NCBI RefSeq assembly: GCF_052425735.1
Contig: NC_135760.1
Coordinates: 29,884,001 to 29,948,000 of the forward strand
DNA length: 64,000 bases
Source of the DNA: Oculina patagonica
Taxonomy: Eukaryota
Direction: 5' to 3'
A program made the translations under genes and the position numbers. Position 1 is the stretch's first letter; every line of letters begins with the position of its first letter. Under the pieces are notes generated by a model. It did no database searches. It was not told the DNA's origin and saw only the letters and a list, made by a program, of their open reading frames with translations. Of the stretch, positions 14,820-52,589 are shown piece after piece.

Positions 14820-16011
14820 ATGAAGAACACCGAGGAAGAGTCGGTACAAAGGTTGACCGTGAAAAGACTTTTTCTCACGCGCGGAAAGCTAAAAGCATCC
14901 AGTCGTACTTCGGCTCTGATGTCAGGGTTTGCTATGGTGAGTGTTGTTCGACTTCTTTTTTTTTTGCTTCGATTTATCTTTAGAAGACCCAGGGCAACAT
15001 TCTGTAGCTTGGCTGAAGTAGACCAGAGTAAGCTTACTTGCATGTACTTACTGTAGTGACTCTGCTAATTTGATTATTGAAGAACTGCTCTTTGTTTACC
15101 ATGGTGTGAAGCATATCTATGTATCTATGTACTTAATTAATTACATGTATCATCTTTTCCGAAGTTCCCATAAAAGCGTTGTGTCTTTATTTACAAGGTG
15201 GCAATGTTGAAATACATAACGTTGGTTGCCTAATTACTTGGAATATAGTGAAAAGGCTCTATTTTTAACAGCTTATTTTACAATGGAAGTAACTTAACAA
15301 ATTATATGGATGTCTGCTGGTTGTGGCATCTGATTGGAAGAAGATTATTAGGGGCTTTAAGAGCTTAATCCACCATATGATCCAAATATTCAGATTCCCG
15401 GTGGTAGAAGGGGGATATTTAATTGGTCCATTATTCCTGTGTTTTTTTATATAATGAAATGTGAACTTTCACCATTTCATTTGCAGATAGCAATGGTAGA
15501 AATTCAACTAGAACCTGGTATCCCAGAAGGGCTGTTGATAGCCTTCAGTGTGATGACTACCATCCTTATCTCAATACACGTCTTTGCACTCATGATATCT
15601 GTCTGCATTCTGCCAAATATTGAGGGAGTGGCAAATATGCAACAACAGGGAACACAAATGGTACGAGATTCACCACACGAAAAACTACACATACACATTG
15701 AGATTGCATGGATTTTCTCAACAGGTCTTGGGACGCTTCTGTTCTTAGCAGAGATTGCAATACTTTGTTGGGTGAAGTTCTACAATTACAGCAAACCTGC
15801 AGCTGTAGCAGCATCTGTTGTGCTAGTGCCTGTTTGTATTGTGTTTGTTTGGTTTGCTATCCATTTCTACAGGTCTCTTGTTCAACACAAGTATGAAAGA
15901 TCTTTTCAGGGAATTGAGGAACTTCAACAGATTGCTAACCAGCTTCACACAGACACAGGAACATCACCAAGCACACCTAATCCCAGTCCATGTCCTAATC
16001 ACAGAGTTTAG
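14820..16011 (+). CDS. ORAI1: Orai calcium release-activated calcium channel, 213 aa; exons 14820-14936 and 15487-16011
   Basis: [17 protein letters not shown]|IAMVE (TM1 with the E106 equivalent), [16 protein letters not shown] (TM2), [23 protein letters not shown] (TM3), [17 protein letters not shown] (TM4/nexus). Phase-0 GT..AG intron 14937-15486. Confidence 0.96.
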
Positions 16012-16386
16012 CAAACCTTATACTTCACAACCCATACTTAATGAACTCTAATGTTACAAGCAAGTGGATGTACATATTTATAGGGGAATGAATCTCTTGG
16101 ACCCAGACATTAGACCAGTTAAAAGACTGACTAAACTGTCATGAAAACAAAAAGCACACACATAATGAACCAACTTTTTGGTATCATACTCCTTTTTGTT
16201 GTTACTTTTTGGAACAAAACATTCATTACACTGGAGTGCACTGTAATTTTAGGTAGTAGCCCAAGGCTAGAAATATCCAAATGAGGCTTGCAAAAGTTCA
16301 GGGCTTGGTGGTTTGGTGATCACATGCAGTACGAAAGTTTAAAACATCCATGACTTACTTTGTTCTGATATCACCATGGAAATTAA

Positions 16387-17357
16387 GTGGCAGTTTCTCT
16401 TAAAGCGGTCCATCGCATTTCGGGTCGGAAAAAAGTTTTCCCTCAAACTTTGCCCAGTGAACTATCTTAGGTTGTAAGTAAATGCAACGACTTTAGTTTT
16501 TGGAAATACGTTAAAATATGTTAATTTTGATACATTTTGATTTACAGGTCCGTGAAAATTTAAATACCAGCAACCGTTAGATCGCTTTTTGTAAACATGC
16601 AAAAGTATGGTGTCTTCGCCGGCCATTATTTCACGAGTCCAGACCAGACCATTCTAAATTCCAACTGAATCCTACTAAACAGATGTTAGGAAGCATAGAA
16701 ATATAAAAATACCTTGCACTTTTTATCTTCCTTTGCCACAGCGACTTCGAAAATTTCGTGCTTATGCGAGTAAGTAAGCTCATTTGCATAATATGTATGA
16801 AATTCTCGCATAAGCACGAAATGTTCGAAGTCGCTGTGGCAAAGGAATATAAAAAGTGCAAGGTATTTTTATATTTCTATGCTTCCTAACATCTGTTTAG
16901 TAGGATTCAGTTGGAATTTAGAATGGTCTGGTCTGGACTCGTGAAATAAATGCCGGCGAAGACACCATACTTTTGCATGTTTACAAAAAGCGATCTAACG
17001 GTTGCTGATATTTAAATTTTCACGGACCTGTAAATCAAAATGTATCAAAATTAACATGCGTTTCCAACCTTTGAAGGACCACTTAACTTAGGAATAATAA
17101 TAATAATTTGGTGCGTTTGGTTGTTTTTGAGCGGCGAGCTCGTCAACTTATGAAATTTCTCGTTCTGGCCAAGCTCAAAATTAGGCCTTTTGCAGCCTTC
17201 ACTGTTGAGAGCTCTAAAAATATATATTTTAACGTATTTCCAAAAACTAAAGTCGTTGCATTTACTTACAACCTAAGATAGTTCACTGGGCAAAGTTTGA
17301 GGGAAAACTTTTTTCTGAACCCGAAATGCAATGGACCGCTTTAAGAGAAAATGCCAC
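16387..17357. mobile_element. ~1-kb foldback (palindromic) non-autonomous transposon with TTAA TSD between the Orai and MORN3 3' ends
   Basis: Outer arms ~16383-16520 / 17224-17361 and inner arms ~16519-16775 / 16820-17057 are near-perfect reverse complements; ttaa on both sides. Confidence 0.85.
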
Positions 17358-18292
17358 TTAAATATGGCTAGAAGATTTAGCTTCCAGTGGTTTTTGATGC
17401 AGGCTAAAAATTCTCTCTCTCTTTGAGTTTACAATAGCTGTAGCTATTTTTTTTATTATTATTATCAATAACAGATTTCGTTATAACATTGGTAAATCGA
17501 CCTGTGGATCCACTTCAGAATAAAATCCACAAATTACTTTGGCAATGTTTAAAGTGAATTTAATAGGGAACAGGGAATAATTGAGGTTCAGTTTTATGTC
17601 CTTGTTACTAGATGAAGTTTTTCTTGGTTTTATTTAAACTTTTTCAAAGGAGTAGTTCAATTTGGTGTATATTGTTAAGTATATCCTAAGTAAAAGGGAA
17701 TTAAACAAGGCAATATTAATTTGTTTTATTGATAGCAAGTACAATGCTATATAATTGCTCTTTTGTAATAACTGTCCAGAGCATAGTACTAGAAGTTTCT
17801 GTACAAAAATATTAAGTTATAAACATGGTAAAAGATTTACAACAATCATCACACTGAAAAGTAAAGCAAACATTTACATGTAGTCTGTTTTGAACAGTAC
17901 TTGATTCAAGTAACCATGTTTTACACATTCATTGACCTAACTGGCCAATCTTTCATGATCCATACCACCATTCTTTGAGTCTTCCTAGGAGTCATCTGTT
18001 GACTTTTTCCCATCAGGAATATGTATAAATTACTTGTAAAATTATATACAAAAGCCTGCTTCTTGGTGATTAATAGTTAACAAGTTACAACATTGATCAA
18101 GTTTTTTTTTCTTTGTTTCTCAACTACTGTTTGCTGATTTTCATCATACCATCATGTGTTCAGAGAAGCAGGTTTCTCCTGTATTTATTTGTACTTGATT
18201 TTGCGTATGCCTTTGGCTTTTGTTGTTATGTACATCATTAAAAATAAAGGGAGCTTAATAAATATCAAGGTACATAAAATTATAAAAAATCA

Positions 18293-18372
18293 TCACTGCT
18301 GTTCATCCAGAAATGTGTCCTCTGCATCTTTCACTACTCCTTTTGTATCTTGAAGTTTACACTACATTTATG

Positions 18373-18405
<33 letters not shown>

Positions 18406-21400
18406 ATCACTGGTAAACTTCTAGTAAAAAATAATTGAAAAAAGGAACCTAACACAATTCTCAGTCTTTTTAATTGCAATAACCAGAAATATTTGGGTCT
18501 GTATGGGACAATTTGACTACTGGTAAGTTATGCGAACAGATCTGCACTGAGTTCAGGGAGGTGTGTTCTTAGAGAAAATTGGAAACAGTTCTTGAAAAGA
18601 AAATACTTGACTTGAGTAAAATCAGAAATGATTGTGTCTTTTTAACTCAGCATTCTCACATATAGGGTCAATTTCTGCTGCTCTCCTGACCAGCTAAGTA
18701 ACTTTCCCAAACATTGGCTGTAACTAGCCTACACATTATACTGTATATGTATGGCATGTACATTGTAGTTTGTCAGGATCATTCTTACAACTAACATTTT
18801 GAGACAATTCTCGGCTTGCGGTGTATTATGAGGGAGCAGTGTTAAGTATTTTAAACGAGTATAGAATGGCTAGAGGAGTTTGCGCTAGGAGAACACCCCA
18901 AATAAAAGAAAATAGCTGCAAGAATTATGATTAAGCCAAGCCCAAGGCTTTGTTGGCTGCGGTGAAATCTACCATACACATGTTTTGAATGATGTAGGAT
19001 AAACACTAACCTCAGGTAAAGAGTATGTTGTTGGGTTTGGAGCTTCATGTCGACCAAAATCTTCAACAGTGCCACATTTTGGTATGTCATCGCACCACAC
19101 TCCAGTGTACAACTGCCCTCGGTCAAGATAGAAAAATTTGCCCTTCCCATGTTTTTTGCCATCTTTCCATTGACCTTCATATCGATTGTCATTTGCTGTC
19201 AAAAAGAACACCAATTATAGCTAAAATGTTAAGAGTAACTGAAGGTTGAGGTAGCAGTGTTAGCAACTCATCTAAAGTATTTTATCAAAAAAAAGGGTGA
19301 GGTGACTATTTAACTTGCTCAAATTGCATGTACAGCAGAATCCTGATTTCTCAAACCAGGGAAATGAAAACTGGTCCACGAAATCATGAGCATTACTTCT
19401 AAGACAGAAAATGGGTGAATATGGAATTTGGTGCTCAACAAGAACACCCAATCAAAACCTCAGTCAACACTGAGTACAAGATTTAAATGAAATTCAGGCA
19501 AGGCCCAAGAAGAAAACAGAGTTGACATCAAGTCAAGAACCATTGTGCTGCTTTGCTAACTGGGTTAAGCAGTTATAATAGTTGCATTTACTGGGAGGTG
19601 GCATGGCTTAGTGGTAGGGCGCTGGACTTGTAATCTGGAGGCCCAGGGTTCAAATCCACCTCCCTGCCACTAGATGGATTTGTCTTCGGTCGTCCCGAAT
19701 ACAACTCCTCCACGCTTTGTAAATAGCCAACTGGTTAGTCTCCTGCCAGTTGGGGCTTTTAACAAGTTTATGTTCAATTTGCAATATTTGTTTATTTATT
19801 TGCAGTGTCCACAATTAGCAAAACAGTGCTAAATACATTGACACTTAAATTACATGATTTTTTTTTTAATTTTTTTATCTTACCTAGCCTAAGCATTCCT
19901 TCTCCATTTCTCATGTTATTGTACCATTCTCCCTCATAAACTGCACCATCAGCGTAATACATTCTTCCCCAGCCGCTCCGCTTGTCTGCATACCACTCCC
20001 CTTCATAGTATTCATTATGTGAGTAAAAATTTGTTCCATAACCCTGGGGATGAAACATTGTACAATACTCAGTTACATGTAAGTTAGGGTTCACAATTAA
20101 TGTAGAGGGGGGCTTTCTTTATATTTTTTCCCTTTTTTTGGCCCCCCCCCCCCCTCTATTATTTGGTGTTTTTCCCTGCCCACAACTGTAGGTAAAATAC
20201 CATAGCCCTCATCCACCATCACTCAAAAAACCCTAATGATTAAAACAAGACATTTTTAGTCTAAAAATTAACCTCATTATGACAGTTGTTTTAATAGCAA
20301 AACTACTAATAATTATTACCAGTAGTTTATGCACCGGGCGTAGGCAGGGGATTCCAACTTAGCTGAGTCTTTGTGGATGTTCAAAAGAGTCACTAAACTT
20401 CAATAAAATGTTGTCAGAAAGTCCATTAAAATGGTCAAAAGTCCCCACTTTGGGCAAAGAATTGCTGTCAAATCCCCTGCCTATGCCTGGCCTCCCTCCA
20501 GCGGCTTAACATTGATAGGTGCATTATTGAGAATGAAAAACTTAAATTTATCAAACTGAATGTAATGAATACATACATGTCTTTTGTCATTTTTCCATCC
20601 ACCAGAATAAACCTTTCTGTAACCTCCTCCCTCAGGTAAACTGTATGTACCAAAGCCACAGCGATGGTCATCTTTCCAGTCTCCATCATAAATAGCTCCA
20701 GACTTCTTCCATGTCATGGTACCCTTTCCTAATAAAGTCATTTAAGCCTTGTTACGTGTTAAACAGATACCAAAGAGGTAGGACCAAGAGAATACTGGGA
20801 TCTAACAAGGGAAAGAAGATTCTGCCTCACACTCAGTTTCAATGTTGTTATATTACATGCTGGCTTCTTTTACTTTTTGCTCAATGAGAAATAAGGAAAT
20901 GCATACTGTTAAGGTGTCTGGACATCAATAACATATTGAGGACTTGTTTGTAAAGTAATGTTTAGACTGAATGTTATGTCTGAATGTGAAACCTGGGGAA
21001 GGGGAAGAAGGAGAGTAGATGTCCTATAGACAAATCCCTGCACTCGCTCCCACCACCCCCTGATTCTTCAACCTTCCCCTCCTTCCATTACATTATCTTC
21101 GGAGATTGAGAAAATGCTGGATAAGGATCCTTGATAATTGTAAACAGTCTAAGTAAGATTTCCCTGCAATATAGTCGAGAAGAATAAGTAAGTTGGTTTA
21201 GAGAATTCACCAATAAAATATTTCGGACCTGCAGAACATCTTGCAGCTTTACTCTGCTATTAATGAGAGGTTATTCTAGTGTGTTCTCACTGTTACCAAC
21301 GGATAAATGCACTTCAAAATTCAGGAGGTTGTTTTATTGGTAAACCTGATTTGTAGCGGGATTATTTGAATGGAATCAAATAAAACTGTAAGCTTGCAGA

Positions 21401-21604
21401 GACTTACAAATAACCCCAAATCGAACGTGCAAACAGGCAAGCGCGCGCGAGCTACTAACCATTCTTCAGATTTTTATCCCATTCACCAGTATACTGATCG
21501 CCATTCACCGAATAAACTGTGTGATGAACGCCTTTCTTTTGTGCTTTGTAATCCCATTCTTTCCATAAAGGCTCGCTTTTCTTGGGTTGTTTAGTAATCG
21601 GCAT
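18293..21604 (-). CDS. MORN3: MORN repeat-containing protein 3, 236 aa; exons 21604-21460, 20728-20577, 20043-19884, 19195-19011, 18361-18293
   Basis: N-terminus MPITKQPKKSEPLWKEWDYKAQKKG resembles vertebrate MORN3; serial YxGxW MORN repeats; C-terminal KCGTVEDFGRHEAPNPT. All introns GT-AG; 711 nt in frame. Confidence 0.95.
19593..19820 (+). mobile_element. tRNA-derived SINE in MORN3 intron 3
   Basis: A box TGGCTTAGTGG and B box GGTTCAAATCC, followed by a non-tRNA body (gtaaatagccaactggtt..) and an AT-rich tail. Confidence 0.75.
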
Positions 21605-21779
21605 TTTGTCGAAGATTCCACAAACTGAAGCTACAAATTAGATAATTATTTACTTCTGTAACTAAGGGAAGGCCAGGTTACTCAGTAGAAACATACCCAT
21701 GATGCCTTTCTACACTTGCACATAAAATGGCGGCTACCTACGAATTTTGAACGTATTTTGGTGTCAAAATTTTCAGGCA
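21605..21779. promoter_or_regulatory. Compact bidirectional promoter region shared by MORN3 and GPATCH3
   Basis: Start codons only 175 bp apart, head to head. YY1-like AAAATGGCGGC at ~21724-21734; RFX X-box-like GTAACTAAGGGAAG (21658-21671) and GTTACTCAGTAGAAAC (21677-21692). Confidence 0.65.
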
Positions 21780-24700
21780 ATGGAAAACTTAAACGACCAA
21801 ACTACAGCTAAAGAAGAAGAAGAAGTGTGTTATGAAATTGTTAGTAATATTCCGAAGGAATTTCGTTCCGCTGATTTGCGAGCAATGTTCTCAAACTTCA
21901 TCAATAATGGAACTGGGGGATTCAAGTGCTTCCATTTTCGACATCGGCCTGAGTTTAGACTTGAGACAGTCTCGAATGGCCAGGATAAACAGTCGTCCAC
22001 TACTACATGTTGTGTTATAATGATCTTCAAGAAAAAACTACAAGAGTTGATCAAGTGTTATCACGGCAAAAACTGGCTTGACCGCAGTGGAAAGTATTAC
22101 CCATCCAAAGCAGTCATATCAAAAATCAGAATTAAAGAAGGAAAAGGTTGTAACAGGGGGGGGGAGAAGGGGGGGGTGGGGTTCGTAATAAATAGCTTTT
22201 TCCTAACTTAATTAACTCACTCACTCATCCTCTTCGCCTTCGGAGAGGCAAAAGGGCTGCATTATCTGAGCAATTTGCGACTGAGTATCGTAAAAGACAA
22301 AATACAGTAGAAACCCGGTAACTCGAACTCGGATAACTCGAACTAATTTCCATTTCCCTTGGACCCACTTCAGGTCATTGGTACTCAGCTAACTCAAAAA
22401 CCCGCTAACTCAAACTGTTTTTTCGGTTCCCTTCAGAGTTCGAGTTACCAGGGTTCAACTGTAGTTAATTATAACTCTGGCCAATCTCAAAGGGCATGTA
22501 CTAAAACGACTGAAATGAAACCGCTGAAACGAACAAAATCACTGAAACAAGCAAAATCCATCACCATTATTGCGAGATAACCATAAACAGGCTAACCCAA
22601 GTGTCATTCATGCTAACCGGAGTGCATGGTGCACTCCGGTTAGCATGAATAGTACTCTCGTCAGCCTATTTAACATTAGCTCTCAATAACTGTAATGGGT
22701 TTTTTTTGTTTCGGTAATTTTGTTTCGTTTTGCTCTTATCAGCTGTTTTGATTGTTTTGTTTCTTTGTTTGGGTTCTAGTACATGCCATCACAAAGGACA
22801 CAGACATTCTAATGAACATATCAAAACTCAAACAAAATACATGCATTCAGTGTGAAGTGCAGGAAAACATATGTGAGCGAGTCGCGATTGGTTTTAGTTT
22901 ACATCCGATTGGATATGAAAAAACCAACAACAGAACTTTGATGTTTTAGTCAATCACATAGCATAAGTGAAGCAAAACCAGAGCTGGTTCCGGTTCAAGT
23001 TTACTTTTACACTCAATATTGAAAATAGTAAACAACTAGCCCAAGTGCACTGTTGAGTTGCCAAAAGCATGTGGGAATTTTCAGAACACAGGAGAAGTGC
23101 ATACTGCAGAGCAGGAGTCAAAGCAAATGGTTTTCATACTTCTTAAGTGTTCTTACAAATTCGTAAGTTCACTATGTCCCAGTTAAAAAATGCTAAACAA
23201 ATTGCCTGCAGTCAAACTTGTGATGTAGGCCACTTGTACTATATCTTGACAATGCAAAAGCATGATGTGGGCCACATGATTTATCAAGCTATAATGAACT
23301 AAAACTAACCAAACATGGCACTTGCAATTCCTTGAACATGCATTTTATCATGCATGGATATGTTACAGTAGATCCAAGGTTTGTGGGGCAGGATATACAG
23401 ATGACCTGATGCTTTGGTTTTGCTCCAGTACACACTGTCTACAACATTGGTCTACAGCCAATCTCACAATTAATTAGACACAGAATCAGAATCAATCACA
23501 CTTTCCCACACTTGGTGCTGGTTATGTGTTTTTGTTTCAATTTCTTGTGTTTCTTGTGATTGGCCACTTTAATTACCACAATAAAGTGAAAACCACTATA
23601 TGTCATTATCATTGACTACTTATTTCATGATCTGGTCATGCTGGGTATTATAGTTATAAGACATCTTCTTTGAAATTAGTTTGTAGTAACTGTAACATTT
23701 CCTCTCCTTCTTATAGACCTTCCCTACAGAACAAGGCAAGAAAAAAGTCAGCAGTCTTCCACAAGAACAAACTTAGAGTTCTCACAGCAAGACCTTAATG
23801 AACTGATTGAGCTCCGTCCTCCTCCGCTGATGCCAAATGGTAATGTTGGAACACCTCTGTCTGTATTCATGGAGTTGATAAGAACTTGCAAGCTCCCTCC
23901 ACATGTAATCAAAAAACTTGACTTGGATTTTTCTGTGGGAAAGTCCAAAAAGAAATATAGTAATGTTCCACTTGATTACAAGTCATTGGAAAAAAGAGTT
24001 TCTGCTGCCGCTACAAAAAGAAATAAAAGAAAACTAGTTTCTCAATCAGTGAAAGACTTAAAGCAAGGTGTGTCAGAAACAAGTGACTCTTCGTCATCTA
24101 CATGTGGTTTGGAAACTGAAGAGCCCCAAAGGACCGAGCAGTATGGCAGTGAAAATAGTTCGGACGGTGAAGAAATCAACAAGATTGAAGTTGATGGTGA
24201 TGATGATAGTGAAGCTGAGGAATGGGACAGACATGAATCATTGCACAATGATGTTACAAGTCAAGAACGAACAAAAGAAAGACTATTTGAAGAGGACATT
24301 GAACTGAAGTGGGAGAAAGGAGGTAGTGGTCTTGTGTTTTATACTGATGCAGCATTCTGGAAAGAACAGGAAGAACCAAATTTTGATGAAGAGACTGCTG
24401 ATGATTGGGATGTCGACATGGAAATATATGAAAATCCAGGTATGGCAGAAACATCAAGTTTTGATATTTAATATCGAATCAGTAACACAATGCTGTTGGT
24501 TGTGATGACAAGTGGGGGGTTTATTTTAATAGATTTTGAAAAGAGTCAATGGGAGGTTCCACATATTGCAGAGTTTTCAGAAAGTGCTTGTTAGTAGACA
24601 TTCCAGAAATTTAATGTGTCAAACATGAGAGACCTGTGTTTGATCACATTTCCAAACACTGAGAAAAGAGTTGAAAATGTGACACATAGCATGGTATCTT

Positions 24701-25286
24701 TGACGAAATTTGAGTTGTTTGGAAATGCGATAAAACACAGCTTTAAGAGTTTGATGCATCTTCTCAACTGGGACAAAAATTACGGAGTTAGTGTAAAATG
24801 AAATTCTGAAAATCTATGCTAATTATGATTTATCTTTCACATTCAGATGGAGGGGACAAAGATTCTCGAGATCTTCTTCAGATGCGAGTAGAAAAGCAGT
24901 GGAGAAAAGGAAATGATATTGACCTGAATAAAATTGGAGGCTTTGAAAAACATACAAGAGCATTTGGAGGCCAACTGATGAGGAAGCAAGGTTGGAAGGA
25001 AGGGGGGAGCCTTGGCTCAACACAGGAGGGAATAACAGAACCTGTGGTTGCCGAAGGACAATTGCCCAAATGTAAGAGAGGTTTAGGTTACTATGGTGAC
25101 AAGTTACAACGACATGTGAAACGACCCAAGGCTGAAAGAAATGTTATTATATCAACGGTTTATGATGAACCAGACAACAATGAAGAAAATGTGTTTGAAT
25201 CATGGGGACCTGATAAACTTAAGTATGTAAACAATGTTGATTTTGTACGTGGAAAATCTCACCCTGAACAAAGCAGAAAAATATGA
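21780..25286 (+). CDS. GPATCH3: G-patch domain-containing protein 3, 509 aa; exons 21780-22146, 23717-24439, 24847-25286
   Basis: Family motifs VSNIP..RSADLR..F.CFHFRHRPE, LMPNGNVGTP, EEWDRHESLH, IELKWEKGGSGLVFYTDA, DDWDVDM and a G-patch (FEKHTRAFGGQLMRKQGWKEGGSLG..RGLGY). Phase-1 GT-AG introns; 1530 nt in frame. Confidence 0.95.
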
Positions 25287-25792
25287 TTGCCAAAGATCAA
25301 ACCAACAATGTACCGTGTCAAGAAATGAAACATGAGGATGAATTTGTTTATACAGTGTAGGTGGGATATAGACTGTTGTTTTTTTGTCTGGGTGTACAAA
25401 TTAAGAAACAACACAAGACTACTTTGTTGAAATGGTACATTATTTTATTGATCACTTGTTGAACAAGGTTTTCAATAAGAGCCAAAGGCTGGCAAATGCC
25501 AAAGTCCAAGTAATGTCAACTGAGTTTGCCACTGCGGTGCATTAAATGTCTTAACGCTGAGTTAAGCATTAAAGAAAACAACTTGCTCTCTATAACCTGT
25601 CGTTTACTTTTGTACAATATTTACAAACATGTACATCTATTAAATCAAATAATCTGTACAGACAGTTAGGCAAAGGTCAATCGTAAATAAAGACCTATCT
25701 TACCCCGTCATCAACTGTATACACTGCAAAGTATTAACATTTTTACATGTACTACATTAATAAATTATGTACATTTTTTGGCAATAGCCCAA

Positions 25793-25943
25793 TTTCGATA
25801 TATTAAAATTCAGCCTAAAACAATAGACCTCGGGACGAGGCTCCGGGGACCAAACTATAGAGTTTGTGGGGTTTATTCCCCGGAGCCTCGTAGTGATGTC
25901 TATTGTTTTAGGCTGAATTTTAAAATATCGAAATTGGGCTATT
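25793..25943. mobile_element. Short palindromic MITE; related copy at ~27350-27516
   Basis: aatagcccaatttcgatat..cagcctaaaacaatagac is mirrored by gtctattgttttaggctg..atatcgaaattgggctatt. Confidence 0.7.
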
Positions 25944-37323: not shown

Positions 37324-37354
<31 letters not shown>

Positions 37355-42400: not shown

Positions 42401-42555
42401 TGTAATATTTTATATATATTTAGATAGAGCTATCATATTTTTACTATTTTTTTTATTAGCACATACATATTTTGAATGAGCTTTCAGCTCATTAGACATT
42501 ACGTGGATGAATATTTATTATATTGATTGATGAATATTTATTCATCAATCAATCA

Positions 42556-42610
<55 letters not shown>

Positions 42611-45600
42611 AATATAGACAAAAAGAAAGAGATCCATGATAAGTGGAAACCCACTTAATGCAGTGAATTTGGTTGGGTTTCTTTGTCTGCAGGCCTGCTT
42701 GTTTGCAAAAAAATTCATGGGCGGGCACTATCTATCCGGGCATTTTTTCTCAAACAGGCATTTTGGGCTGATAGTGCCCTCTGCAGATGAACACTATCGC
42801 ATCATGTGATCAATTTAAACCAATCAGAGTCGGAGAAAATTTAGTTGTGAACTATTAGGGCTCATAGTGCCCCCTGCGGATGAACACTATCGCATCACAT
42901 GATCGTTGTAAACCAATCAGAATCTGAGAAAATTTAGTGGTGAGTTAAAACAATAAATAGTTAAGCATTCCATGCATATCCCATCATAGACTCAAATTAG
43001 TTGTCTTCTGGTAAGCAAATAAATAAACAGTTCCTGCTTTAAACAGGGTCAAGGTTTGACACCCTGACAGTCCTATTGGTGTCACTCGTCTCAGGTTTCT
43101 GTTTATTACCAGCATGCAAAGAAAGTAACCTGGGGCTAGTGAATTATATCCATCAGTTGTTCGATGGGCATGTAAGGTGTTTGGACTTTTTTGTTGGTAG
43201 CTGAAGGAGGCTATTAAGAAATGCCTTCAGGCTAGCACGTGCTTCCAACTTGTCTGAAGGCAACCTGGAAAATTATTTTCTTTACACACTGAGGACCCCC
43301 TCAGCTACATTAAGTACTTACTTAGATATAGAGAAAAATAAAAGAACTGTCCTCTAAATATCTGATACACTCTTCCTTCTGGCCTGAAAAGAAATAAAAA
43401 TACCGTTAGGCAGGACTGTTCAAAAAATAAGACAAAGTTTCAGCAGCATAAAGTGACTAAGAGTATAGTCCATAGCAGGTTATCCCCCTTCAAGTAAATT
43501 TCCCTAAAAAAAATCAGTCCCAACTTAATACACTAATGCATGCAGACACTGGTATTGTGAGTTCACAACACAACCTGTGTCCAGGTTCAAACTTGAACTG
43601 CTCAACCATGAGTCAAATGACAACCTGTAGTTCCTAATCGTTCATGTTAAGATCTGTCCATCCCAGCTACCTTGTAACTGACTGTTGATTTGTTTTTCAA
43701 ATTTTGAGATTAAAAAAACCTCAAACCTCCAAGAGAAACAACATTTAGCTAGAGAAATTGCAGTATTCAACTTGGTAAAGCAAATCCAAGGCAAAGACTT
43801 TTGAGTTATTGGCAGGCTAAAGAAATGAAGGGTTCCAGGAATTAGAATTCCACTGTCTTGGTTTAAAACTAGCCACATTAGTTTGAATGTGGCTAAATGT
43901 TATTTTGGCTAAGCAAAAATCAAGCCAATGCTAGTCAGCAGTGATTTGGAACAATGAGTGGCAAAGTGACATACAGGGTTTCTGCAGTTTGCTCCCTTGC
44001 CCTCCCTCCCTCAGGTGGATATGGTAAGTATAGCAGTTGGTAAGCATCTCCACTGAACTTTTCAGTGTGATGGTGCCTGGTGGTGGTTGCCACTCTCAGG
44101 GTTGCCATGGATACCTGTGTGCCATTGCTCAAGGCTCGTAGTTCACCTGGAACCACCACCCACTTGCATAGGAACCTTCTCAAAGTGCATCTATTGGCGA
44201 TGACTTAAAAACATTGTGCCATACTAGATGGTATTTATTCATTTGACAATCAACTCTTTCGAGCATAATATAATTGTCATAATTCAGGATTTAAGAATTA
44301 TTTGGGAAGTATGAAAGAAATTCAGAAAGAGAGAAAACTTACCAAATTAGAAGCAATCCTGATAAAAGGATGGACAGATAGTGATGAGTCACCCACCAGC
44401 CCTTAATCCTATGTTAAAAAATAAATTAAAATAATTTGGTAAAATACTTAAAACATTTTTTTTTTGGCTTCTATTTTTTCTAACTAAAGAAAGTTCCCAA
44501 AACGGCAACCTGACACTAGTGTATAAAGAACATAATACATGTGCAAAATGATCTGATTCATACCGTGAGCCATTGGCAATCAAAATATGTTCCTGAAGGG
44601 TTAGCGTACTGTAGTACCACAATAACATGGCATGAAACAGGGCATCGGCTATCCTGGAAACAAAAATAACTTTAGCCATCATTATCCAACCTCACTCTTT
44701 TATAACCCTTTAGGCCTTAATAACTACATACAAATTCTCCTGACTGATCTCTATACAATTTCTTATGGTATTAGTTGGGAGAATTTGTTAAAAGATCAAG
44801 CAATTTCACTTTGGTGATCATTTTATTAATTCTCATAACCTTTTCTCTCATTGAAATATTGATACTGTGGGGAAAAATTTAATGTTGGTCACTTTAAGGA
44901 GTTAAAGGGTTAAGGTGGCCTGATCCTATTTATTTACGTGATGGTTGCATTTTTGAATCGCGCTTTTTGGCAGAAAAGATTTCACCGATTTCTTCGAATT
45001 TTTGCGTCCTGAATGAAAAGTGTTCGAATTTACAGAATATGGCATTCGTTTTTCAGTCGGAATAAAGTCTTTTGAGATTTGAACATATTTTCAAAATCTA
45101 GTTTTTACCAAAAATGTCCATAATTTTAAAACCCGATGACAGATTTCTCCCAAACTTTAGCAAATAAGCCTCAGAGCTCTCTAGTTTTGTATCAGGAAGT
45201 TTCATGACAATCCTGACCATGCAACTCGCTGCACAAAATGCTTGTCAAATTGTATTTAAAAATGCTTCGCTTATGCATTCATGTCAACTGACGCACAAAT
45301 AGCGGAACAGTGTAGCCAAACTATCGGTCATCTGAAGGTATTATGCTACCCAAAACCTTATCAAAATGAAAGTGAGTAATCAGAAACCTACAGCAAATAC
45401 TGACAGCGCAACAAGACGGACAATTTTATGACTTGTGCAAGGTAAAATTAAATATTTTATATTCATCTCACCTATCACGTATTCGTTCACTTATTTTCGA
45501 AAAAAATCTTAGGATAGCAAAAATGAACATTTAAGAAAAACCCTTACCAGTTCTCGTCACAGTAGGTTACCATTCTGAGGAGAAATAAAACCGCCAAGTT

Positions 45601-48600
45601 GAGTACTTCCCACCATCCGCTTTTCGACTGCAATGAAAACCCTGTGCCTGATAATATATTCAAGATGACTGACTTTGTTTTCGCATTCCTTACGGCCAGT
45701 TTGCCACTTGGAGATAACAAGTCTTGTGAAACATTAAAACATCATTATTAATAAGAAAACCAATTTTTATATTTGAACACTTGCTATACTCAAGTGGCTA
45801 ACTGCCCGTGAGGAATTCGAAAACAAAGTCAGCTATCTTGAATATATTACTGAGGCTTCTCGATGCAGTCGAAAAGCGGATAGTTGGAGGTACTGAACTT
45901 GGCGGCTTTATTTCTCCTCAGAATGGGAACCCACTGTGATGAAAACTGGTAAGGGGTTTTCGTAGACGTTCTTTTTTGCCATGCTGAGATTTTTTCCGAA
46001 AATAAACGAACAAATACGTGATAGGTAAGATAAATGTAAAATATTTTATTTTACCTTGCATGGGTCATAAAATTGTGCTTCTTGTTGCGCTGCTTATGTT
46101 TGCTGTAGGTTTCTGATTCCTCGCTTTCTTTTTGATAAGGTTTTGGGGATCATAATCCTTGCAGATGACAGATAGTCAGGCTGCACTGTCCCGCTGTTTG
46201 TGCATCAGTTGACATAATGCATTGGCCAAGCATTTTTAGATAAAATTTGACAAGCATTTTGTGCAGCGAGTTGCATGGTCAAGATTGTCATGAAACTCCC
46301 TGATACAAAACTAGAGAGCTCTGAGGCATATTTGCTAAAGTTTGGGAGGAATCTGTCGTCGGGTTTTAAAATTATGGACATTTTTGGTAAAAACTAGGTT
46401 TTGAAAATATGTTCAAATCTCAAAAGATTTTATTCTGACTGAAAAACGAATGCCATATTCTGTAAATTCGAACATTTTTCATTCAGGACGCAAAAATTCG
46501 AAGAAATCGGTGAAATCCTTCCTGCCAAAAAGCGCGAATTCAAAAATGCAACCATCACGTAAATAAATAGGTTCGAGCCACCTTAAGCTAGATTGTAAAA
46601 ACCCATCCAGCGGAGAACCCGTAGTCTATTCACACTACTGAAACCAGTCTTAGAGTAAAGTGCTGCACTAAAGAGTCAACTGAAAAATGAAACCAAAAAA
46701 TTATGGAAGACAAATGAACCATGTCCAGAACAAAATATCCTTGAAGCATTTTGCTAGAATTCACAGGACATCCATGAGATCACAGGCACCCCACCAGATT
46801 TGAAACATTTTCCCTTATCAAATGCACTAAATAAATATTATTCATATAATAATAAAACTGTTATAATAAAAAAAGTATTGCTTGGAGATCACAGGCTAGC
46901 TGTTTACCTGTAGTTGAAGATGTACAAGTTTAAGATGGTAAAAACCATGCTAAGCACTTGCATCTTGAACTTAAACTTCTCATAATCATTTTTATATTCC
47001 ATCCTGAAAATTAATTACAACTGTCACTAATGATTTACAAGAGATTAATATCAAACCCAAAACAAATGTTTTACTATTATTTTAATAATAAATTATAATT
47101 TTTAGATTACCATATTTATTCGATTAAGCGCCCTGGGCGCTTATTAAATTTTTGGAGTTAGGGAGTGGGCGCTTATTCAAGGCTGGGCGCTTATAAATAT
47201 AATTTTCAACCATTCTCAGCACGTAGCAACTTAATTTTGCAACAAAACAACAAATAATAACAACCTTGATTACGAACTAAAGCAGAATTTTAACTATTCA
47301 CTGAAGCTTTCTGTAAAATACTAACAAAACTCGGTCTTCGGGGAAGTCTGTTGGTAATACTAAGTCTATTTCAATCTCATTGATACTCCTCTTGTGGACT
47401 TAAGTTTCTTGGGGGAGGTGGGTGGGCGCTTATTCAAGGCTGGGTGCTTATTAACTTTTTCTACCTTCGGGGTGGGCGCTTATTTGAGGTGGGCGCTTAT
47501 TCAAGGTTGGGCGCTTAATCGAATAAATATGGTACTCTAGACAAATACATGTACAGTATATACAGCAAGCCACACAAGTCTCTTAGTAGGCACTGACTTG
47601 GTATAATGTAATCTTGTATGAGTAATGTTGCTAGTACATGTAGCTCAATACTGCTAGTAGCTCAATATTAAATAGGGGAGGGGAGGGGGAAGAACAAAAC
47701 TTTGGTCTGTGGTTGTGAATAATGACAAACAGGTTTAAAGAGATACTGTATTTTTTCGATTAAATGCCCCGGCATTTATTTCAAACTTAGCCTGGTGGAC
47801 CCGGCATTTATTTGACTCCTGCAGTTTATTCGAGACCGGTTTGCATTAACCAATGGTTTTTATTCATTATTTTTGGCAAACATCTGTCTTGCTAATATAC
47901 CTCCAGCTTATTATACCGGTACCTCACATAAGTAGCTGAGGGGACTACTTTCAACTTCACCTTCAGTTGGAGACCCGGTGTTTAGGTACCCGGCGTTTAA
48001 TCAAGAAAATACAGTAGAAAGAAAGTGAGAGTCATGTTGTGTATATTAATTCATACTGATCAATCATGTTACTTTCAATGCCATAAGTCACAATAGAATT
48101 CTACAGAATCACTTACTTTGAATTATACAGTGAGACATTAATATTCCCTAAGCACAACTTGAGAAATAACCTGTAAAGACAAAATGAAGGAAAGGCTATT
48201 TACTTTTTCAAAGAATATTACTTTGTTGTTAATTCTGATTGGTCACAGCCTTCAATAAAGTGGCTTTCTAATGATTGTCATAAAACCAAATCCAAAGTAA
48301 ATACACCTGGCCAATCATAGCAGAAACAAATAACACAATAAAGAAATCATGACTTGAAGCAAAAACATGCAAATGCACATAAGCCTAGTAAGGATTAGTT
48401 TCCAATACAGTAAAAACACGTGAGTAAGAACTTAATTTTTCCAGGTTAGCCTAAACAGGTTCTAACATAAATGGTAGTTAACACAAACTAAGGTTGTTAA
48501 TAGGTTCTTATTTTCTGAAGAAAAATTCACATTGTTGCTAATAGAACTTTTAGTGGTATTCGCCCTATTCCTTGTATAAAATTTGCACACCACATACATG

Positions 48601-51600
48601 TTTATGTAAAAATGAAGCACTGATCATTCATAACATAACATTATATACATGTACAGTAATGCCTTGTCCAAACTTATCCTGAAAGTAAACATTCTTAATC
48701 AATTTTAGAAAATAAGAGCCTGTTTCCAAATTTTAGGCTTAATAGGTTCATGTAAAAGGGGATCTAATATGTAAATTTTAGCCTAACAGGTTTTTAAATG
48801 TTAGGTTCTTACTCGCGGGTTCTTACTGTTACAGTAGCTTTTCTGTTCTGTACTCCTGATAATATGTCATATTTGAAAAACAAATCAAAAACATGTTTGT
48901 TCTGATTGGTTAGAGCTCTTCTCTAAGGTGCAGAATTGCAGAAATTTAATTACTATCACCAATACCTACATTCCTATTTTATTAAAAAACTATCCAGAGC
49001 CCATTGAATCGCTGTTAGCAATTCCAAAGCTTTAATACCTGAGTTCTTAAGATCAATCAGAGATCAGCAAACACAATTGTGTTGTTCCAGCAAATATCCA
49101 CCCCTCCCATGCAGGGTTCTCCCACACCCCTATTGATAAATTCCAGTTTTGGTTCATACTTTCCTTTAAAAATGTTGGCTTTTGAGACACCCCTCCCCCT
49201 TAAAATTTTCAGTGATCCTCCTTGGAGTGGGTGTATATATTTTTGGGGTTCTGCACATTCAATCACAGCAATCATACACCACTCTTGAAAATTCAAAAAT
49301 AAATTGAGGAAAATAAACACAAGCCACATTCTGGGTGAATAAAAGCTTACCCTGCTCTTGAAGGAAAACTCGTTTCAAAATCCTTTATTTTTCTTTCCAG
49401 TTCAGAGATCTTCAACTGAAGTTTATGAGTCTTATCTTTCTGTTCATCAGTTAATGGTCCATTCTGAAATCTATGCGTGAAAAAGTGACATCAATTTAAG
49501 TAACATTATTTGAGAGGAAAGAAGAGAACTGTAAAAAGTAGGTAAAAGGTAGACTCTGTGGTCCGTCAGGCTGGAGCTTATCCCGGTTTTAGTAGCTACT
49601 CCCCCCTGGATGGGATGCTAGTCCATTGCAGGGTTACCCCGCAGCATTCAAGTTGCCGGTACCCATTTATACACGTGGGTGGAGAGAGGCACTGTGAGAG
49701 TAAAGTGTCTTGCCCAAGAACACAACACAATGACCCAGGCCAGGGCTCAAACTCGGACCTCCTGATCCGGAGTCCAACACACTACATAGACCACCATGCC
49801 TCCCTGTAAAAAGTACAGCATCATAAATATGAGACGTTTAACATACCGTCGCAGTGACTCCTGGAAATCCCTGAGTTTTCTTTTCTGCTGGTTTACTGCA
49901 GAGACACAGGATTTTTGACTTGAATGAAACTCGTCCATTTTCTGCTGATAGTCTTGCAACTTGGTTTGCTAAAATCATGAAGAAAAGTGAATGACTGAAA
50001 AATTGAATAATAAAATTAAGGTGCCAGCCAAATGCAAACCTTTGTTTTAAAGACAACAGGACGGTCAGTAACATATTAAAAATGGCCAGAGAAGACCTGA
50101 TCATGAGTAAAAAACATACAAGCTCTTAAGATTCCAATAATTGGAATCTCTATTGAGTTGTGTATATACTAGTTATGCAACGCTTTCGAGTGGCATACTA
50201 TGGAATATCCCACGAGTCACTTGTATTTTCTCGGTATACACACGAGCCTTTAGGCGAGTGTGTATACGAAGAAAATACAAGTGACAAGTGGGATATTCCA
50301 TAGTATACCACGAGAAAGTGTTGTGTAACTATTTTATACCATGCCATAGAAAATACGCTCACTAAATTTCATCGAGAATAAGATCGCAGCGCACGATGGG
50401 AAGGTTGGGTTGAATACCGTCGAATATACAACGGCTTTCCTGTATTCTGATTGGCTGTATTTTCTATGGCATGGTATAAAGAGCTGTATTGAACACCCAC
50501 CTAGAATACTACTAGCTACATGTATGAGTGAAAATAAGGTCTCTATAAATTTAATATTTGTTATCAAAAGGTCATGGATAGTAATGTAATACATTTAATT
50601 ACATTTTCCAAGTAAAGGGAATGTACTTTTAGGAGCATTGGCTGGTTTGGTATTTTGGAATTTACAAATTTCTCTTACTAACATTTTTTGCAGTCACCAT
50701 GTTCCAACAAGTTTTTTAAAGAGGAGAGGGGAGCCTAAGGGAGAAAAGATGCCAAATTCTAAGTTCTGCTCTTCTATAAATCACCAGTCAAATTTCTACT
50801 ACCTACAGTTAAATAATGAGTTACATTGTTTTAAGGTCGCAGGGGATACCTACAGCATGAATAAATCCATGAAGCGAAATTTTGCTTGACCTGTATCTTT
50901 TAAAACGCTTATTTCTCGGCTGTTATGGGTGCGATTAAGCTCAAATTTTACAGAGACATAAAGAAATGATAAAAGATTATGTATGTCTTCTTTTGTGTGG
51001 TAGATTGTACTTAGCGGCGATGTAATAGCCACGTTTGTGCCAAATTGGGAAGAACATCATTTTGTGGCAGAGTTTGCGGAACGAATACGAGACAGCACAC
51101 TGTGAGCTTGTCAAAAAATGATCAGTCAATATCTCTAGAGTGTCATAACAGAAGCGGATTTTTTAATTTAAAATTTGCCAGCAAGTTATGGCGGTTTAAA
51201 TGTGCAAATTTTTATTTAATGCCTTCTACCTCTTTCTAAAAGCGCTCATTTAAAATTCCGCCTCTGTTATGACACTCTACAATATCCATAGTTTACCTAT
51301 CTGCAGTGGCAAGTCATGAAGGTCTGTATCCGCGCTGTATTCTCTGCCACAAAATTGTCGGAAAAGTCCAAACTTTGAGATTTCCGAAGGTGTCCCGACC
51401 AAAACACGATCAGTTTCCAAAGGAGAGATGTAATTATGGTAATTATATTCCACGCTTTTATGGTGAGAACAATGCGTTTTTTATGAAGGACACGATTGTT
51501 TATGCCGAATATTATTGTGATTACTCTGAGTTGCAGAAACATTCAAATTTGAATAAAAATCAGCTCATAGACTTCCTACAATCTATATAAACGTATAACG

Positions 51601-52589
51601 CCAAGTGTTGTTTTAAATTGGTTAAAATATCAAAGAAAAAGGATTTTTTTTTAAAAAAAAATCACGCGCACGCACCCATATTTTTATCCAGTCATGAATA
51701 TCTCGTAAAGTTGACGATGTCCGTCGTTGCACTTCGTGCATACGCTTTAAATAAATGCATAATGATGAGCCTAAGGTGTCCCCCGCGACCTTAAAGGTAA
51801 CAAAAATCAGATGAGAAGAATAACCACTCTTTTTGGTTGTGTGTGGAAATTACACACCTGGAACCTTTGTGTGATACCATGAATGACCATAATTTTTATA
51901 AGTTAGCTTTTCTCATAAAGAAAGTACGCTTCTCACAACGAAAGTAAGCTTATAATCACTGCCAATCCATGAAAAGGTGAATTGTAGGCAAGACTTATCT
52001 CTGCTTTTCATTCCTGGACAAAAGGTCAAATTCATCCCGATCTCCAGACTTGAATTGCAAAGATAAAATGATGTTCAATACCAAAAAATATATTCACTGA
52101 CTTATCTAAAAGCGTCGTCTATAATGAAAAGGAAAAGTAAAAAGCGTATATAAATCGACGGTCAAATGGTCAGTTTTAATACATTGTATTTGGTGAAGCA
52201 GGTTTATATTTTTACAATGCATGGTTTCATAAATTATTTAGGATGCCCCTTTGCGTTAACACGCGGCGTCAAATCTTTGTAGCAAATTTAAAATAACTCA
52301 CAGTTAAAACCGTTCTTAATTACGTTATCTGAAACAAGACGAAGCAATTTTTCAATTAAAAAAAAAATTGTTTATGCATGCAGGAACTTATCTTGTCCGC
52401 GCGGGTACCGCTAAATGGACACCGCGTTCACCACAATGTCAAATGAGGTCTTTTTTAGCCACTGATCATAACTACTGTTAAACAACGACATAAAAATCTT
52501 AAAACCTTGAACTTCTGGGTCTCCTGTTCTAAGGCATTCCATTCTTCTTCCCATTCTTGAAGACTTGAAATCTCGGCAATGGCCGCCAT
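39495..52589 (-). CDS. TMEM120: TMEM120 (TACAN family) membrane protein, 346 aa; 12 exons: 52589-52506, 49968-49847, 49470-49351, 48170-48117, 47003-46908, 44653-44564, 44408-44343, 43383-43322, 42124-42032, 40949-40885, 40599-40531, 39614-39495
   Basis: N-terminal coiled coil; [93 protein letters not shown]..FAGN. All introns GT-AG; 1041 nt in frame. Confidence 0.95.
41489..41867. mobile_element. Kolobok-like MITE (TTAA TSD)
   Basis: ttaa|aggggctctgtcacg ... cgtgacatagcccct|ttaa; same TIR family as 53202-53580 and 54562-54770. Confidence 0.75.
42558..42610. repeat. (TTGA)n microsatellite
   Basis: About 13 tandem ttga units; similar arrays at ~53114-53135 and ~60141-60213. Confidence 0.9.
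44914..46582. mobile_element. ~1.67-kb foldback transposon (almost wholly palindromic, TTAA TSD) in TMEM120 intron 5
   Basis: ttaa|ggtggc..cctatttatttacgtgatggttgc ... gcaaccatcacgtaaataaatagg..gccacc|ttaa; arms of about 800 bp pair almost to the centre (~45720-45785). Confidence 0.88.
47110..47532. mobile_element. TA-flanked MITE with GGGCGCTTATT subrepeats
   Basis: ta|ccatatttattcgattaagcgccc ... gggcgcttaatcgaataaatatgg|ta. Confidence 0.8.
49541..49805 (-). mobile_element. tRNA-derived SINE; further copies at ~54343-54530 (truncated) and ~60898-61205
   Basis: Minus strand has A/B-box-like motifs followed by cttgggcaagacactttactctcacagtgcctctctcc and a tttacc tail; the three copies align. 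Confidence 0.75.
50835..51790. mobile_element. Kolobok-like non-autonomous element (TTAA TSD) with an internal hairpin MITE (~51137-51278)
   Basis: ttaa|ggtcgcaggggatacct ... aggtgtcccccgcgacc|ttaa. Confidence 0.7.

What the first reader, a model, noticed from the sequence alone, without database searches (positions are those of the whole stretch)
14820..52589. Orai-MORN3-TMEM120 linkage mirrors the human ORAI1-MORN3-TMEM120B neighbourhood: candidate ancient microsyntenic block
Seen: Orai(+) and MORN3(-) are immediate tail-to-tail neighbours, and TMEM120 lies ~18 kb further on in gap-free sequence. Known: human 12q24.31 carries ORAI1, MORN3 and TMEM120B consecutively, with ORAI1 and MORN3 convergent. 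Inference: if the host is a cnidarian, this adjacency predates the cnidarian-bilaterian split. That would suggest a constraint such as shared regulation or interlocked 3' ends linking a store-operated Ca2+ channel, a MORN-repeat protein and a membrane/lipid protein. TMEM120 orientation differs from human and three genes intervene, so only the Orai-MORN3 pair is strictly preserved.
Basis: partly seen in the sequence, partly recalled or inferred. Interest (0 to 1): 0.8.

Follow-up and report, generated by a model that had tools for sequence, protein, structure and literature searches.

The report
Ancient KDM2-Orai-MORN3-TMEM120 gene neighbourhood
In this stony coral the calcium-channel gene Orai, the cilia gene MORN3 and the membrane gene TMEM120 lie together as they do in humans. 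The same neighbourhood also turns up in a soft coral, a sea anemone, Trichoplax, an acorn worm and amphioxus, so it is a real but unexceptional relic of very old gene order.

Summary
- **Orai (+):** 14820-16011, 2 exons.
- **MORN3 (-):** 21604-18293, 5 exons. It is convergent with Orai, and the stop codons are 2.3 kb apart.
- **TMEM120 (-):** 52589-40322, 12 exons, 18.7 kb beyond MORN3.
- **Between MORN3 and TMEM120:** a G-patch gene, a stathmin-like gene and MTFP1.

Orthology is firm. Orai has one locus in this genome. TMEM120 has one locus plus a small extra contig. The MORN gene is the reciprocal best hit of vertebrate MORN3, with 60-67% identity across four exons.

- **Octocoral:** the same six genes in the same order and orientation.
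- **Amphioxus:** KDM2(-), Orai(+), MORN3(-), TMEM120(+) within 22 kb, matching the human order KDM2B-ORAI1-MORN3-TMEM120B.
- **Nematostella and Trichoplax:** Orai and MORN3 with one gene between them.
- **Saccoglossus:** the two genes are adjacent.
- **Three spiralians and one sponge:** no partner within 10 kb.

Every junction is broken in some lineage, and I found no conserved non-coding DNA. Slow decay of an ancestral block therefore fits better than strict co-regulation. I found no paper that names this block. It is a new example of a well-known phenomenon.

The parts
14820..16011 (+). Orai (CRAC channel subunit) gene. Exons 14820-14936 and 15487-16011, 213 aa.
   Evidence: Pfam PF07856 scores 166.9 bits. 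GT-AG model. Identity is 81-94% to coral Orai proteins. This is the only Orai locus in the genome.
16383..17361 (.). TTAA-flanked palindromic element (MITE-like) in the Orai-MORN3 spacer.
   Evidence: Nested inverted repeats, 85-98% complementary. A contig of run X2 skips 16382 to 17358, so the element is absent in a related coral.
17770..18292 (-). MORN3 3' UTR (minimum extent).
   Evidence: The spliced 1,095-nt contig of run X1 (record 3) covers 17770-18361 and continues through exons 4, 3 and 2 to the joint with exon 1.
18293..21604 (-). MORN3 ortholog. Exons 21604-21460, 20728-20577, 20043-19884, 19195-19011 and 18361-18293, 237 aa.
   Evidence: GT-AG model. Contigs show the three joints among exons 1-4 and cover exon 5. 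Identity is 60-67% and colinear with mammalian MORN3 P0271. Reciprocal best hit. Groups with MORN3 in a tree.
21780..25286 (+). G-patch domain gene, head to head with MORN3. The two start codons are about 175 bp apart.
   Evidence: Pfam G-patch, E = 2.2e-11. Same position and strand in the Acropora-like L001 and in Dendronephthya L008.
27669..29145 (-). Stathmin-like gene (two large exons seen; the full extent may be larger).
Evidence: tblastn match to the Dendronephthya gene annotated PF00836 Stathmin (weak), at the same position and strand.
34534..34950 (+). MTFP1/MTP18, main coding exon.
   Evidence: Pfam PF10558, E = 1.7e-14. Same position and strand in Dendronephthya.
40322..52589 (-). 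TMEM120 gene, 12 exons, 335 aa. Exons: 52589-52506, 49968-49847, 49470-49351, 48170-48117, 47003-46908, 44653-44564, 44408-44343, 43383-43322, 42124-42032, 40949-40885, 40599-40531, 40405-40322.
   Evidence: All introns are GT-AG and the frame is open. Exons 6, 7, 9 and 11 score above the PF07851 cut-off.
52609..53108 (.). Assembly gap (500 N), 20 bases upstream of the TMEM120 start codon.
11674..12588 (+). Intronless rhodopsin-like GPCR ORF. It lies between Orai and the displaced KDM2 and is not part of the conserved block.
   Evidence: 304-aa ORF ending in an NPxxY-type motif. Named by reading, not tested against Pfam.
5144..7444 (+). TRIM-NHL gene, with a second partial copy at 125-1743. 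Lineage-specific filler between KDM2 and Orai.
Evidence: 766-aa ORF.

Best explanation
The span is a surviving piece of a very old animal gene neighbourhood with the ancestral order KDM2 - Orai - MORN3 - TMEM120. It existed at least in the common ancestor of placozoans, cnidarians and bilaterians for the Orai-MORN3 pair. It existed at least in the cnidarian-bilaterian ancestor for the four-gene block.

In anthozoans a G-patch gene, a stathmin-like gene and MTFP1 came to lie between MORN3 and an inverted TMEM120. That derived six-gene arrangement has since been kept in both stony and soft corals. In this coral KDM2 was additionally inverted and pushed about 38 kb away by TRIM-NHL and GPCR genes.

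Shown here: the gene models, the orthology of the three genes and the gene orders in eleven other taxa.

Inferred: the block persists mainly through slow rearrangement in these conservative genomes. Tight head-to-head and tail-to-tail packing, which leaves few harmless breakpoints, probably helps. An indispensable shared regulation or a functional partnership of the three proteins is the less likely cause.
For: Orthology:
- Orai has a single locus in the genome.
- TMEM120 has this locus plus a small extra contig.
- Mammalian MORN3 finds the window's four exons as its best hits at 60-66% identity, while other MORN loci reach at most 46%.
- The best short hits of MORN3 exon 4 are named MORN3.
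- In the tree the window protein sits among MORN3 proteins, 72% identical to the amphioxus one and away from five other MORN genes of its own genome.

Gene order:
- Dendronephthya: KDM2(-), Orai(+), MORN3(-), SPC12, G-patch(+), stathmin(-), MTP18(+), TMEM120(-).
- Branchiostoma floridae, two assemblies: KDM2(-), Orai(+), MORN3(-), TMEM120(+) within 22 kb, with about 650-bp head-to-head spacers.
- Nematostella: KDM2(-), Orai(+), an arginase-fold gene, MORN3(-).
- Trichoplax: MORN3, a BCKDK-like gene, Orai within 10 kb.
- Saccoglossus: Orai then MORN3, adjacent.
- Acropora-like contig: Orai, MORN3, G-patch.
- Human order: KDM2B, ORAI1, MORN3, TMEM120B (PMC11867633).
- This coral: KDM2 on the same scaffold with its 5' exons about 38 kb upstream of Orai, on the + strand.

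Contrast with scrambled genes: SETD1 lies 2.65 Mb away and the BCKDK-like gene 6.4 Mb away on the same scaffold. That is what linkage looks like when only the chromosome is conserved.

Rough null: with about 1,500 genes on the 30-Mb scaffold, a given gene would be the immediate neighbour of another about 0.1% of the time. The chance that the same pairing arose independently in three deep lineages is about 1e-6.
Against: - No partner lies within 10 kb in Owenia, Lottia, Capitella or the sponge Oscarella. In Lottia the two genes are on different scaffolds. The block is therefore not universal, and its presence before the placozoan branch is not shown.
- Only 10-kb flanks could be read, so looser linkage in those taxa is not excluded.
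- No formal genome-wide permutation test was run.
- Contig coverage in two RNA-containing assemblies runs across the whole Orai-MORN3 spacer. This leaves room for overlapping 3' ends, that is, for a local constraint in corals.
Confidence: 0.8

Rival explanations
1. The neighbourhood is actively maintained by function. The candidate mechanisms are bidirectional promoters (KDM2/Orai and MORN3/TMEM120, or MORN3/G-patch in corals), overlapping convergent 3' UTRs of Orai and MORN3 acting as natural antisense partners, or enhancers of one gene lying inside its neighbours.
For: - In amphioxus both head-to-head spacers are only about 650 bp.
- In the coral the MORN3 and G-patch start codons are about 175 bp apart. 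That spacer aligns with the Acropora-like contig together with the flanking exons.
- In run X2 contigs tile the whole Orai-MORN3 spacer at a depth of 15-20, against about 4 in a MORN3 intron. The contig leaving the Orai side overlaps the MORN3 3' UTR contig at 17797-17825.
- A few poly(A) reads lie on the + strand inside the MORN3 3' UTR.
Against: - Every junction is broken somewhere. Orai and MORN3 are in tandem in Saccoglossus and Trichoplax, with a gene between them in Nematostella and Trichoplax.
- TMEM120 is inverted and separated by three or four genes in anthozoans.
- KDM2 is inverted and 38 kb away in this coral.
- Three spiralians have no partner within 10 kb.
- No non-coding similarity outside exons was found to Nematostella, the octocoral or amphioxus.
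- In run X1 the spacer depth (8.4) equals the intron background (8.6), and the stranded reads number only 12 and 24.
- MORN3 is described as an axonemal radial-spoke protein.
Confidence: 0.17
2. The match with human is chance. All these genes merely stay on one conserved ancestral chromosome and happen to lie close in this coral.
For: SETD1 and the BCKDK-like gene, whose relatives are linked to ORAI genes in human (from memory), are on the same coral scaffold but megabases away. Chromosome-level linkage is therefore present regardless.
Against: The same adjacency recurs in a placozoan, three anthozoan orders, a hemichordate, a cephalochordate and human. Amphioxus and human share the same four genes in the same order. 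The expected chance rate per lineage is about 0.1%.
Confidence: 0.02
3. The MORN gene is a different member of the large MORN-repeat family, so the resemblance to the human locus is only apparent.
For: MORN repeats are generic. The exon 4 search is dominated by long multi-repeat proteins.
Against: - Colinear 60-67% identity with mammalian MORN3 over residues 1-219, including the non-repeat C-terminal part.
- Reciprocal best hit.
- Placement in the tree.
- The short last exon is shared with the Nematostella neighbour of Orai.
Confidence: 0.01

Closest known systems
Human 12q24.31 segment KDM2B-ORAI1-MORN3-TMEM120B
   Same: The same four orthologous genes are present. Order and relative orientation of Orai and MORN3 match. 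Amphioxus provides an intermediate with the full four-gene order in 22 kb.
   Different: In the coral TMEM120 is inverted and three genes lie between it and MORN3. KDM2 is inverted and separated from Orai by TRIM-NHL and GPCR genes. Human strand orientations were recalled, not tested.
Ancient metazoan microsyntenic blocks (Irimia et al. 2012; Simakov et al. 2013, PMC4085046; Robert et al. 2022, PMC8851819; Zimmermann et al. 2023, PMC10719294)
   Same: At least three unrelated orthologous genes are kept within a few genes of each other across phyla, with local inversions and insertions. Retention is best in cnidarians, amphioxus and vertebrates.
   Different: This particular block is not mentioned in the main texts or in the supplementary text that the library holds. 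The held part of the Robert et al. tables lists MORN3 only once, in a different Saccoglossus block. Those files are truncated or absent, so prior listing cannot be excluded.
Genomic regulatory blocks (a developmental regulator plus bystander genes, held together by conserved non-coding elements)
   Same: A chromatin regulator (KDM2) sits next to unrelated bystander genes over long evolutionary time.
   Different: No conserved non-coding elements were detected between the coral and Nematostella, the octocoral or amphioxus. KDM2 itself has been inverted away in this coral.

Membership tests
Orai / CRAC channel (Pfam PF07856) | Match to the family profile above the curated cut-off | tested here: met
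   166.9 bits against a cut-off of 25 for exon 2. Both exons are found by the profile in the genome scan.
Orai / CRAC channel (Pfam PF07856) | Glutamate of the selectivity filter in the first transmembrane helix (motif M-V-E-x-Q-L; role recalled from the literature) | tested here: met
   The spliced protein reads ...AMVEIQLE... across the exon 1/2 junction. Channel function itself was not tested.
MORN3 orthogroup | Full-length colinear similarity to vertebrate MORN3, including the non-repeat C-terminal region | tested here: met
   Exons 1-4 map to residues 1-49, 46-100, 102-154 and 156-219 of P0271 at 60-67% identity.
MORN3 orthogroup | Reciprocal best hit | tested here: met
   Window exon 4 finds proteins named MORN3. 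P0271 searched against the whole genome finds the window exons as its best hits.
MORN3 orthogroup | Groups with MORN3 and not with other MORN-repeat genes in a phylogeny | tested here: met
   It falls within a 25-row MORN3 group, separated by a long branch from five other MORN genes of the same genome. Support is 84/86, which is moderate.
TMEM120 (Pfam PF07851) | Match to the family profile and an intact full-length reading frame | tested here: met
   Four exons score above the cut-off. The 12-exon GT-AG model gives 335 aa without a stop. The assembled protein could not be submitted whole to a profile search.
Conserved metazoan microsyntenic block | At least three different orthologous genes within a few intervening genes of each other, in species of at least two phyla | tested here: met
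   Cnidaria (window, L001, L004, L008), Chordata (L005, L006, human) and, for the Orai-MORN3 pair, Hemichordata (L011) and Placozoa (L009).
Conserved metazoan microsyntenic block | More frequent than in gene orders shuffled within chromosomes | not tested
   Only a back-of-envelope estimate was made. No genome-wide annotation was available for a permutation test.
Genomic regulatory block | Conserved non-coding elements spanning the block | tested here: not met
   blastn (word size 9) of the window against L004, L005 and L008 aligns coding exons only. More sensitive methods were not run.
Convergent overlapping gene pair (cis-natural antisense) | Mature transcripts of the two genes overlap at their 3' ends | tested here: inconclusive
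   Contigs tile the spacer and abut at 17797-17825 in run X2, but depth in run X1 equals intron background. Only 12 and 24 stranded reads were laid.

The most novel reading that the evidence does not exclude
The Orai-MORN3 pairing, kept from placozoans to humans, may reflect a real functional or regulatory coupling. One possibility is coordinated or antisense-linked expression of a calcium-entry channel and a radial-spoke protein in ciliated cells, with KDM2 and TMEM120 held in place by shared bidirectional promoters. The neighbourhood would then be a selected unit rather than a relic.
Probability: 0.12. Interest if true: 0.6.

Novelty: new member of a known kind. Interest (0 to 1): 0.35.

Why it matters
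This is a clean, easily checked example of gene order surviving since before cnidarians and bilaterians split. For the Orai-MORN3 pair it survives since before placozoans branched.

It also extends the block. The unit includes KDM2, and anthozoans share a derived six-gene version.

It is useful in three ways:
- as a landmark for orthology assignment of ORAI, TMEM120 and KDM2 paralogs;
- as a marker for reconstructing ancestral linkage groups;
- as a compact test case for asking whether old neighbourhoods are selected or merely slow to decay.

It does not by itself reveal a new mechanism or a link between calcium entry, cilia and TMEM120.

Tried and rejected
- **Conserved non-coding elements.** blastn of the whole window against the anemone, octocoral, amphioxus and annelid loci found only exons.
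- **Literature.** No paper pairs these genes with synteny. The supplementary text held for three microsynteny papers lacks the block or is absent.
- **Failed look-ups.** Two look-ups were not on record, because the Xenia and Lingula proteins are isoform X2.
- **ESM Atlas search of the G-patch gene's middle exon.** Uninformative, best score 0.76. The gene is therefore called only a G-patch gene; GPATCH3 identity was not tested.
- **Poly(A) raw reads.** Too few (12 and 24) to place the 3' ends or prove overlap.
- **Wider block including BCKDK and SETD1.** Rejected for the coral, where they lie 6.4 and 2.65 Mb away on the same scaffold.
- **Not attempted.** Full-length TMEM120 and MORN3 proteins could not be passed to the sequence-search tools. 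They are spliced, and typing them was avoided. TMEM120 in other species was therefore seen only as a neighbour.
Full report
**What is in the window.**
The window is eukaryotic, with about 37% G+C and a single 500-N gap at 52609-53108. Translating the second Orai exon finds coral proteins at 81-94% identity, including Montipora and Acropora. The host is therefore a scleractinian coral. The window is G000:C3:29884001-29948000. It lies 32 kb from the end of a 29.98-Mb scaffold in a 529-Mb assembly.

**Gene models.**
- Orai (+) has two exons, 14820-14936 and 15487-16011, and encodes 213 aa. Its Pfam Orai-1 score is 166.9 bits.
- The MORN gene (-) has five exons: 21604-21460, 20728-20577, 20043-19884, 19195-19011 and 18361-18293. 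It encodes 237 aa.
- A 1,095-nt contig from public run X1, and a second contig from run X2, carry the joints among exons 1-4 (CT..AC on the + strand). The X1 contig also covers exon 5 and a 3' UTR reaching at least 17770. The gene is therefore expressed, and the model holds for exons 1-4; the exon 4/5 joint was not listed.
- TMEM120 (-) runs from the ATG at 52589 to the stop at 40322. It has twelve GT-AG exons and encodes 335 aa. Four exons pass the Pfam TMEM120A-B cut-off in the genome scan.
- Between MORN3 and TMEM120 lie a G-patch gene (+), a stathmin-like gene (-) and MTFP1 (+). The G-patch start codon is about 175 bp from the MORN3 start codon.
- Upstream of Orai are a GPCR and two TRIM-NHL genes.

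**Orthology.**
- Orai has one locus in the genome. TMEM120 has this locus plus a small unplaced contig with the same exons, probably an alternative haplotype.
- A search of 1.8 billion representatives with MORN3 exon 4 returns many long multi-repeat proteins. The short full-length hits, however, are named MORN3 in mammals, fishes, a shark and Schistosoma. Close relatives also occur in choanoflagellates and chytrids.
- All four large exons align colinearly with squirrel MORN3 (P0271) at 60-67% identity.
- Searching the whole coral genome with P0271 returns the window's exons as the best hits at 60-66%. Other MORN loci reach at most 46%.
- In a maximum-likelihood tree the window protein falls among 24 MORN3 proteins. 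Its best identity is 72%, to amphioxus. It is separated from five other MORN genes of its own genome, with support 84/86.

The refutation condition "not the MORN3 ortholog" is not met.

**Gene order elsewhere.**

| Taxon (locus) | Arrangement |
|---|---|
| Acropora-like 555-kb contig (L001) | Orai(+), MORN3(-), G-patch(+) |
| Dendronephthya, octocoral (L008) | KDM2(-), Orai(+), MORN3(-), SPC12(-), G-patch(+), stathmin(-), MTP18(+), TMEM120(-), about 11 kb from Orai to TMEM120 |
| Nematostella (L004) | KDM2(-), Orai(+), arginase-fold gene(-), MORN3(-) |
| Branchiostoma floridae, two assemblies (L005, L006) | KDM2(-), Orai(+), MORN3(-), TMEM120(+) within 22 kb |
| Saccoglossus (L011) | Orai(+) directly followed by MORN3(+) |
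| Trichoplax (L009) | MORN3(+), BCKDK-like kinase(-), Orai(+) within 10 kb |
| Oscarella, sponge (L010) | MORN3 beside a BCKDK-like gene, no Orai within 10 kb |
| Owenia, Lottia, Capitella | no partner within 10 kb |

- The octocoral arrangement is the window's arrangement, in the same order and on the same strands.
- The Nematostella MORN gene is recognised as MORN3 by its short last exon, which it shares with the window.
- In amphioxus the head-to-head spacers are about 650 bp and the Orai-MORN3 tail-to-tail spacer is 1.9 kb. This is the gene order printed for human 12q24.31: KDM2B, ORAI1, MORN3, TMEM120B, RHOF, SETD1B (PMC11867633).
- In Lottia the two genes are on scaffolds of different length.
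- In several frogs and in the horseshoe crab, ORAI1-like and MORN3 proteins sit on contigs of identical length, which points to the same chromosome.
- In this coral the 5' exons of KDM2 lie at C3:29860476-29871224 on the + strand. That is about 38 kb upstream of Orai and inverted relative to the other species.

**Is it more than chance?**
SETD1 and the BCKDK-like gene are on the same coral scaffold, but 2.65 and 6.4 Mb away. This shows what linkage looks like when only the chromosome is conserved. With about 1,500 genes on a 30-Mb scaffold (an estimate), immediate adjacency of two given genes has a chance of about 0.1% per lineage. Recurrence in a placozoan, three anthozoan orders, a hemichordate, a cephalochordate and human cannot reasonably be convergent. 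The adjacency is ancestral. I ran no formal permutation test.

**Why is it kept?**
Evidence against a strict constraint:
- Each junction is broken in at least one lineage.
- Orientation of the Orai-MORN3 pair differs. It is convergent in cnidarians and chordates, and in tandem in Saccoglossus and Trichoplax.
- Other genes have been inserted between the pair.
- In three spiralians the pair is not within 10 kb.
- blastn finds no similarity outside coding exons between the coral and the anemone, octocoral or amphioxus loci. Against the Acropora-like contig only exons and the short MORN3/G-patch promoter spacer align.
- MORN3 is reported as a radial-spoke component of motile cilia and sperm (PMC11755891; PMC4720480). 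This matches its presence in flagellated protists and gives no obvious tie to store-operated calcium entry.

Evidence for a local constraint:
- The packing is very tight in amphioxus and in the octocoral.
- In run X2, contigs tile the entire Orai-MORN3 spacer at a depth of 15-20, against about 4 in a MORN3 intron. They abut the MORN3 3' UTR contig at 17797-17825, so the two 3' UTRs may touch or overlap.
- In run X1, however, spacer depth equals intron background, and the stranded poly(A) reads are too few to decide.

My reading is an ancestral block decaying slowly in conservative genomes. Compact packing probably helps, and selection for co-regulation remains a minority possibility.

**Comparison with what is known.**
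Hundreds of such blocks have been reported across animals (PMC4085046, PMC8851819, PMC10719294). I found no text naming this one. The relevant supplementary lists are truncated or not held, so prior listing cannot be excluded. This is a new, or at least undescribed, member of a known kind.

**Statements from memory, not tested here.**
- The human strand orientations.
- The human positions of ORAI2 and TMEM120A on chromosome 7, and of ORAI3, SETD1A and BCKDK at 16p11.2. These would fit a block duplicated in the vertebrate genome duplications.

Noticed in passing
window 16383-17361: A roughly 980-bp, almost perfectly palindromic, TTAA-flanked element sits in the Orai-MORN3 spacer. A contig of a related coral (run X2) skips exactly 16382 to 17358, so this is a recent MITE-like insertion or polymorphism inside what is probably 3' UTR.
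   Followed up: partly
L009:12903-15723 and L010:12467-14131: In both Trichoplax and the sponge Oscarella the gene next to MORN3 is a BCKDK/PDK-family kinase. In Trichoplax it lies between MORN3 and Orai. In the coral the best match is on the same scaffold but 6.4 Mb away (C3:23484689). Human BCKDK lies near ORAI3 at 16p11.2 (from memory). An even older MORN3-BCKDK-Orai linkage is possible.
   Followed up: partly
G000:C3:29860476-29871224 (upstream of the window): The KDM2 ortholog is on the same scaffold, with its 5' exons about 38 kb upstream of Orai. It is on the + strand, inverted relative to Nematostella, Dendronephthya and amphioxus, where it is head to head with Orai. Two TRIM-NHL genes and a GPCR fill the gap.
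   Followed up: yes
window 21604-21780: MORN3 and the G-patch gene are head to head with only about 175 bp between their start codons. The same arrangement is seen in the Acropora-like contig, and this is the only non-coding stretch that aligns between the two corals.
   Followed up: partly
G000:C1276:6488-8121: A small unplaced contig carries a second copy of the last TMEM120 exons with the same structure. It is probably an uncollapsed haplotype rather than a paralog.
   Followed up: no
window 52609-53108: The 500-N gap begins 20 bases upstream of the TMEM120 start codon, so its promoter and 5' UTR are not in the assembly. The window also lies within 96 kb of the end of scaffold C3.
   Followed up: no
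MORN3 orthologs of about 230-270 aa occur in choanoflagellates, chytrid fungi and a slime mould, so the gene is older than animals and tracks flagellated cells. Whether Orai is its neighbour in choanoflagellates was not checked.
   Followed up: no
L008:13282-14047: The octocoral has a signal-peptidase subunit gene (SPC12) between MORN3 and the G-patch gene. It is absent at that place in the stony coral window.
   Followed up: no
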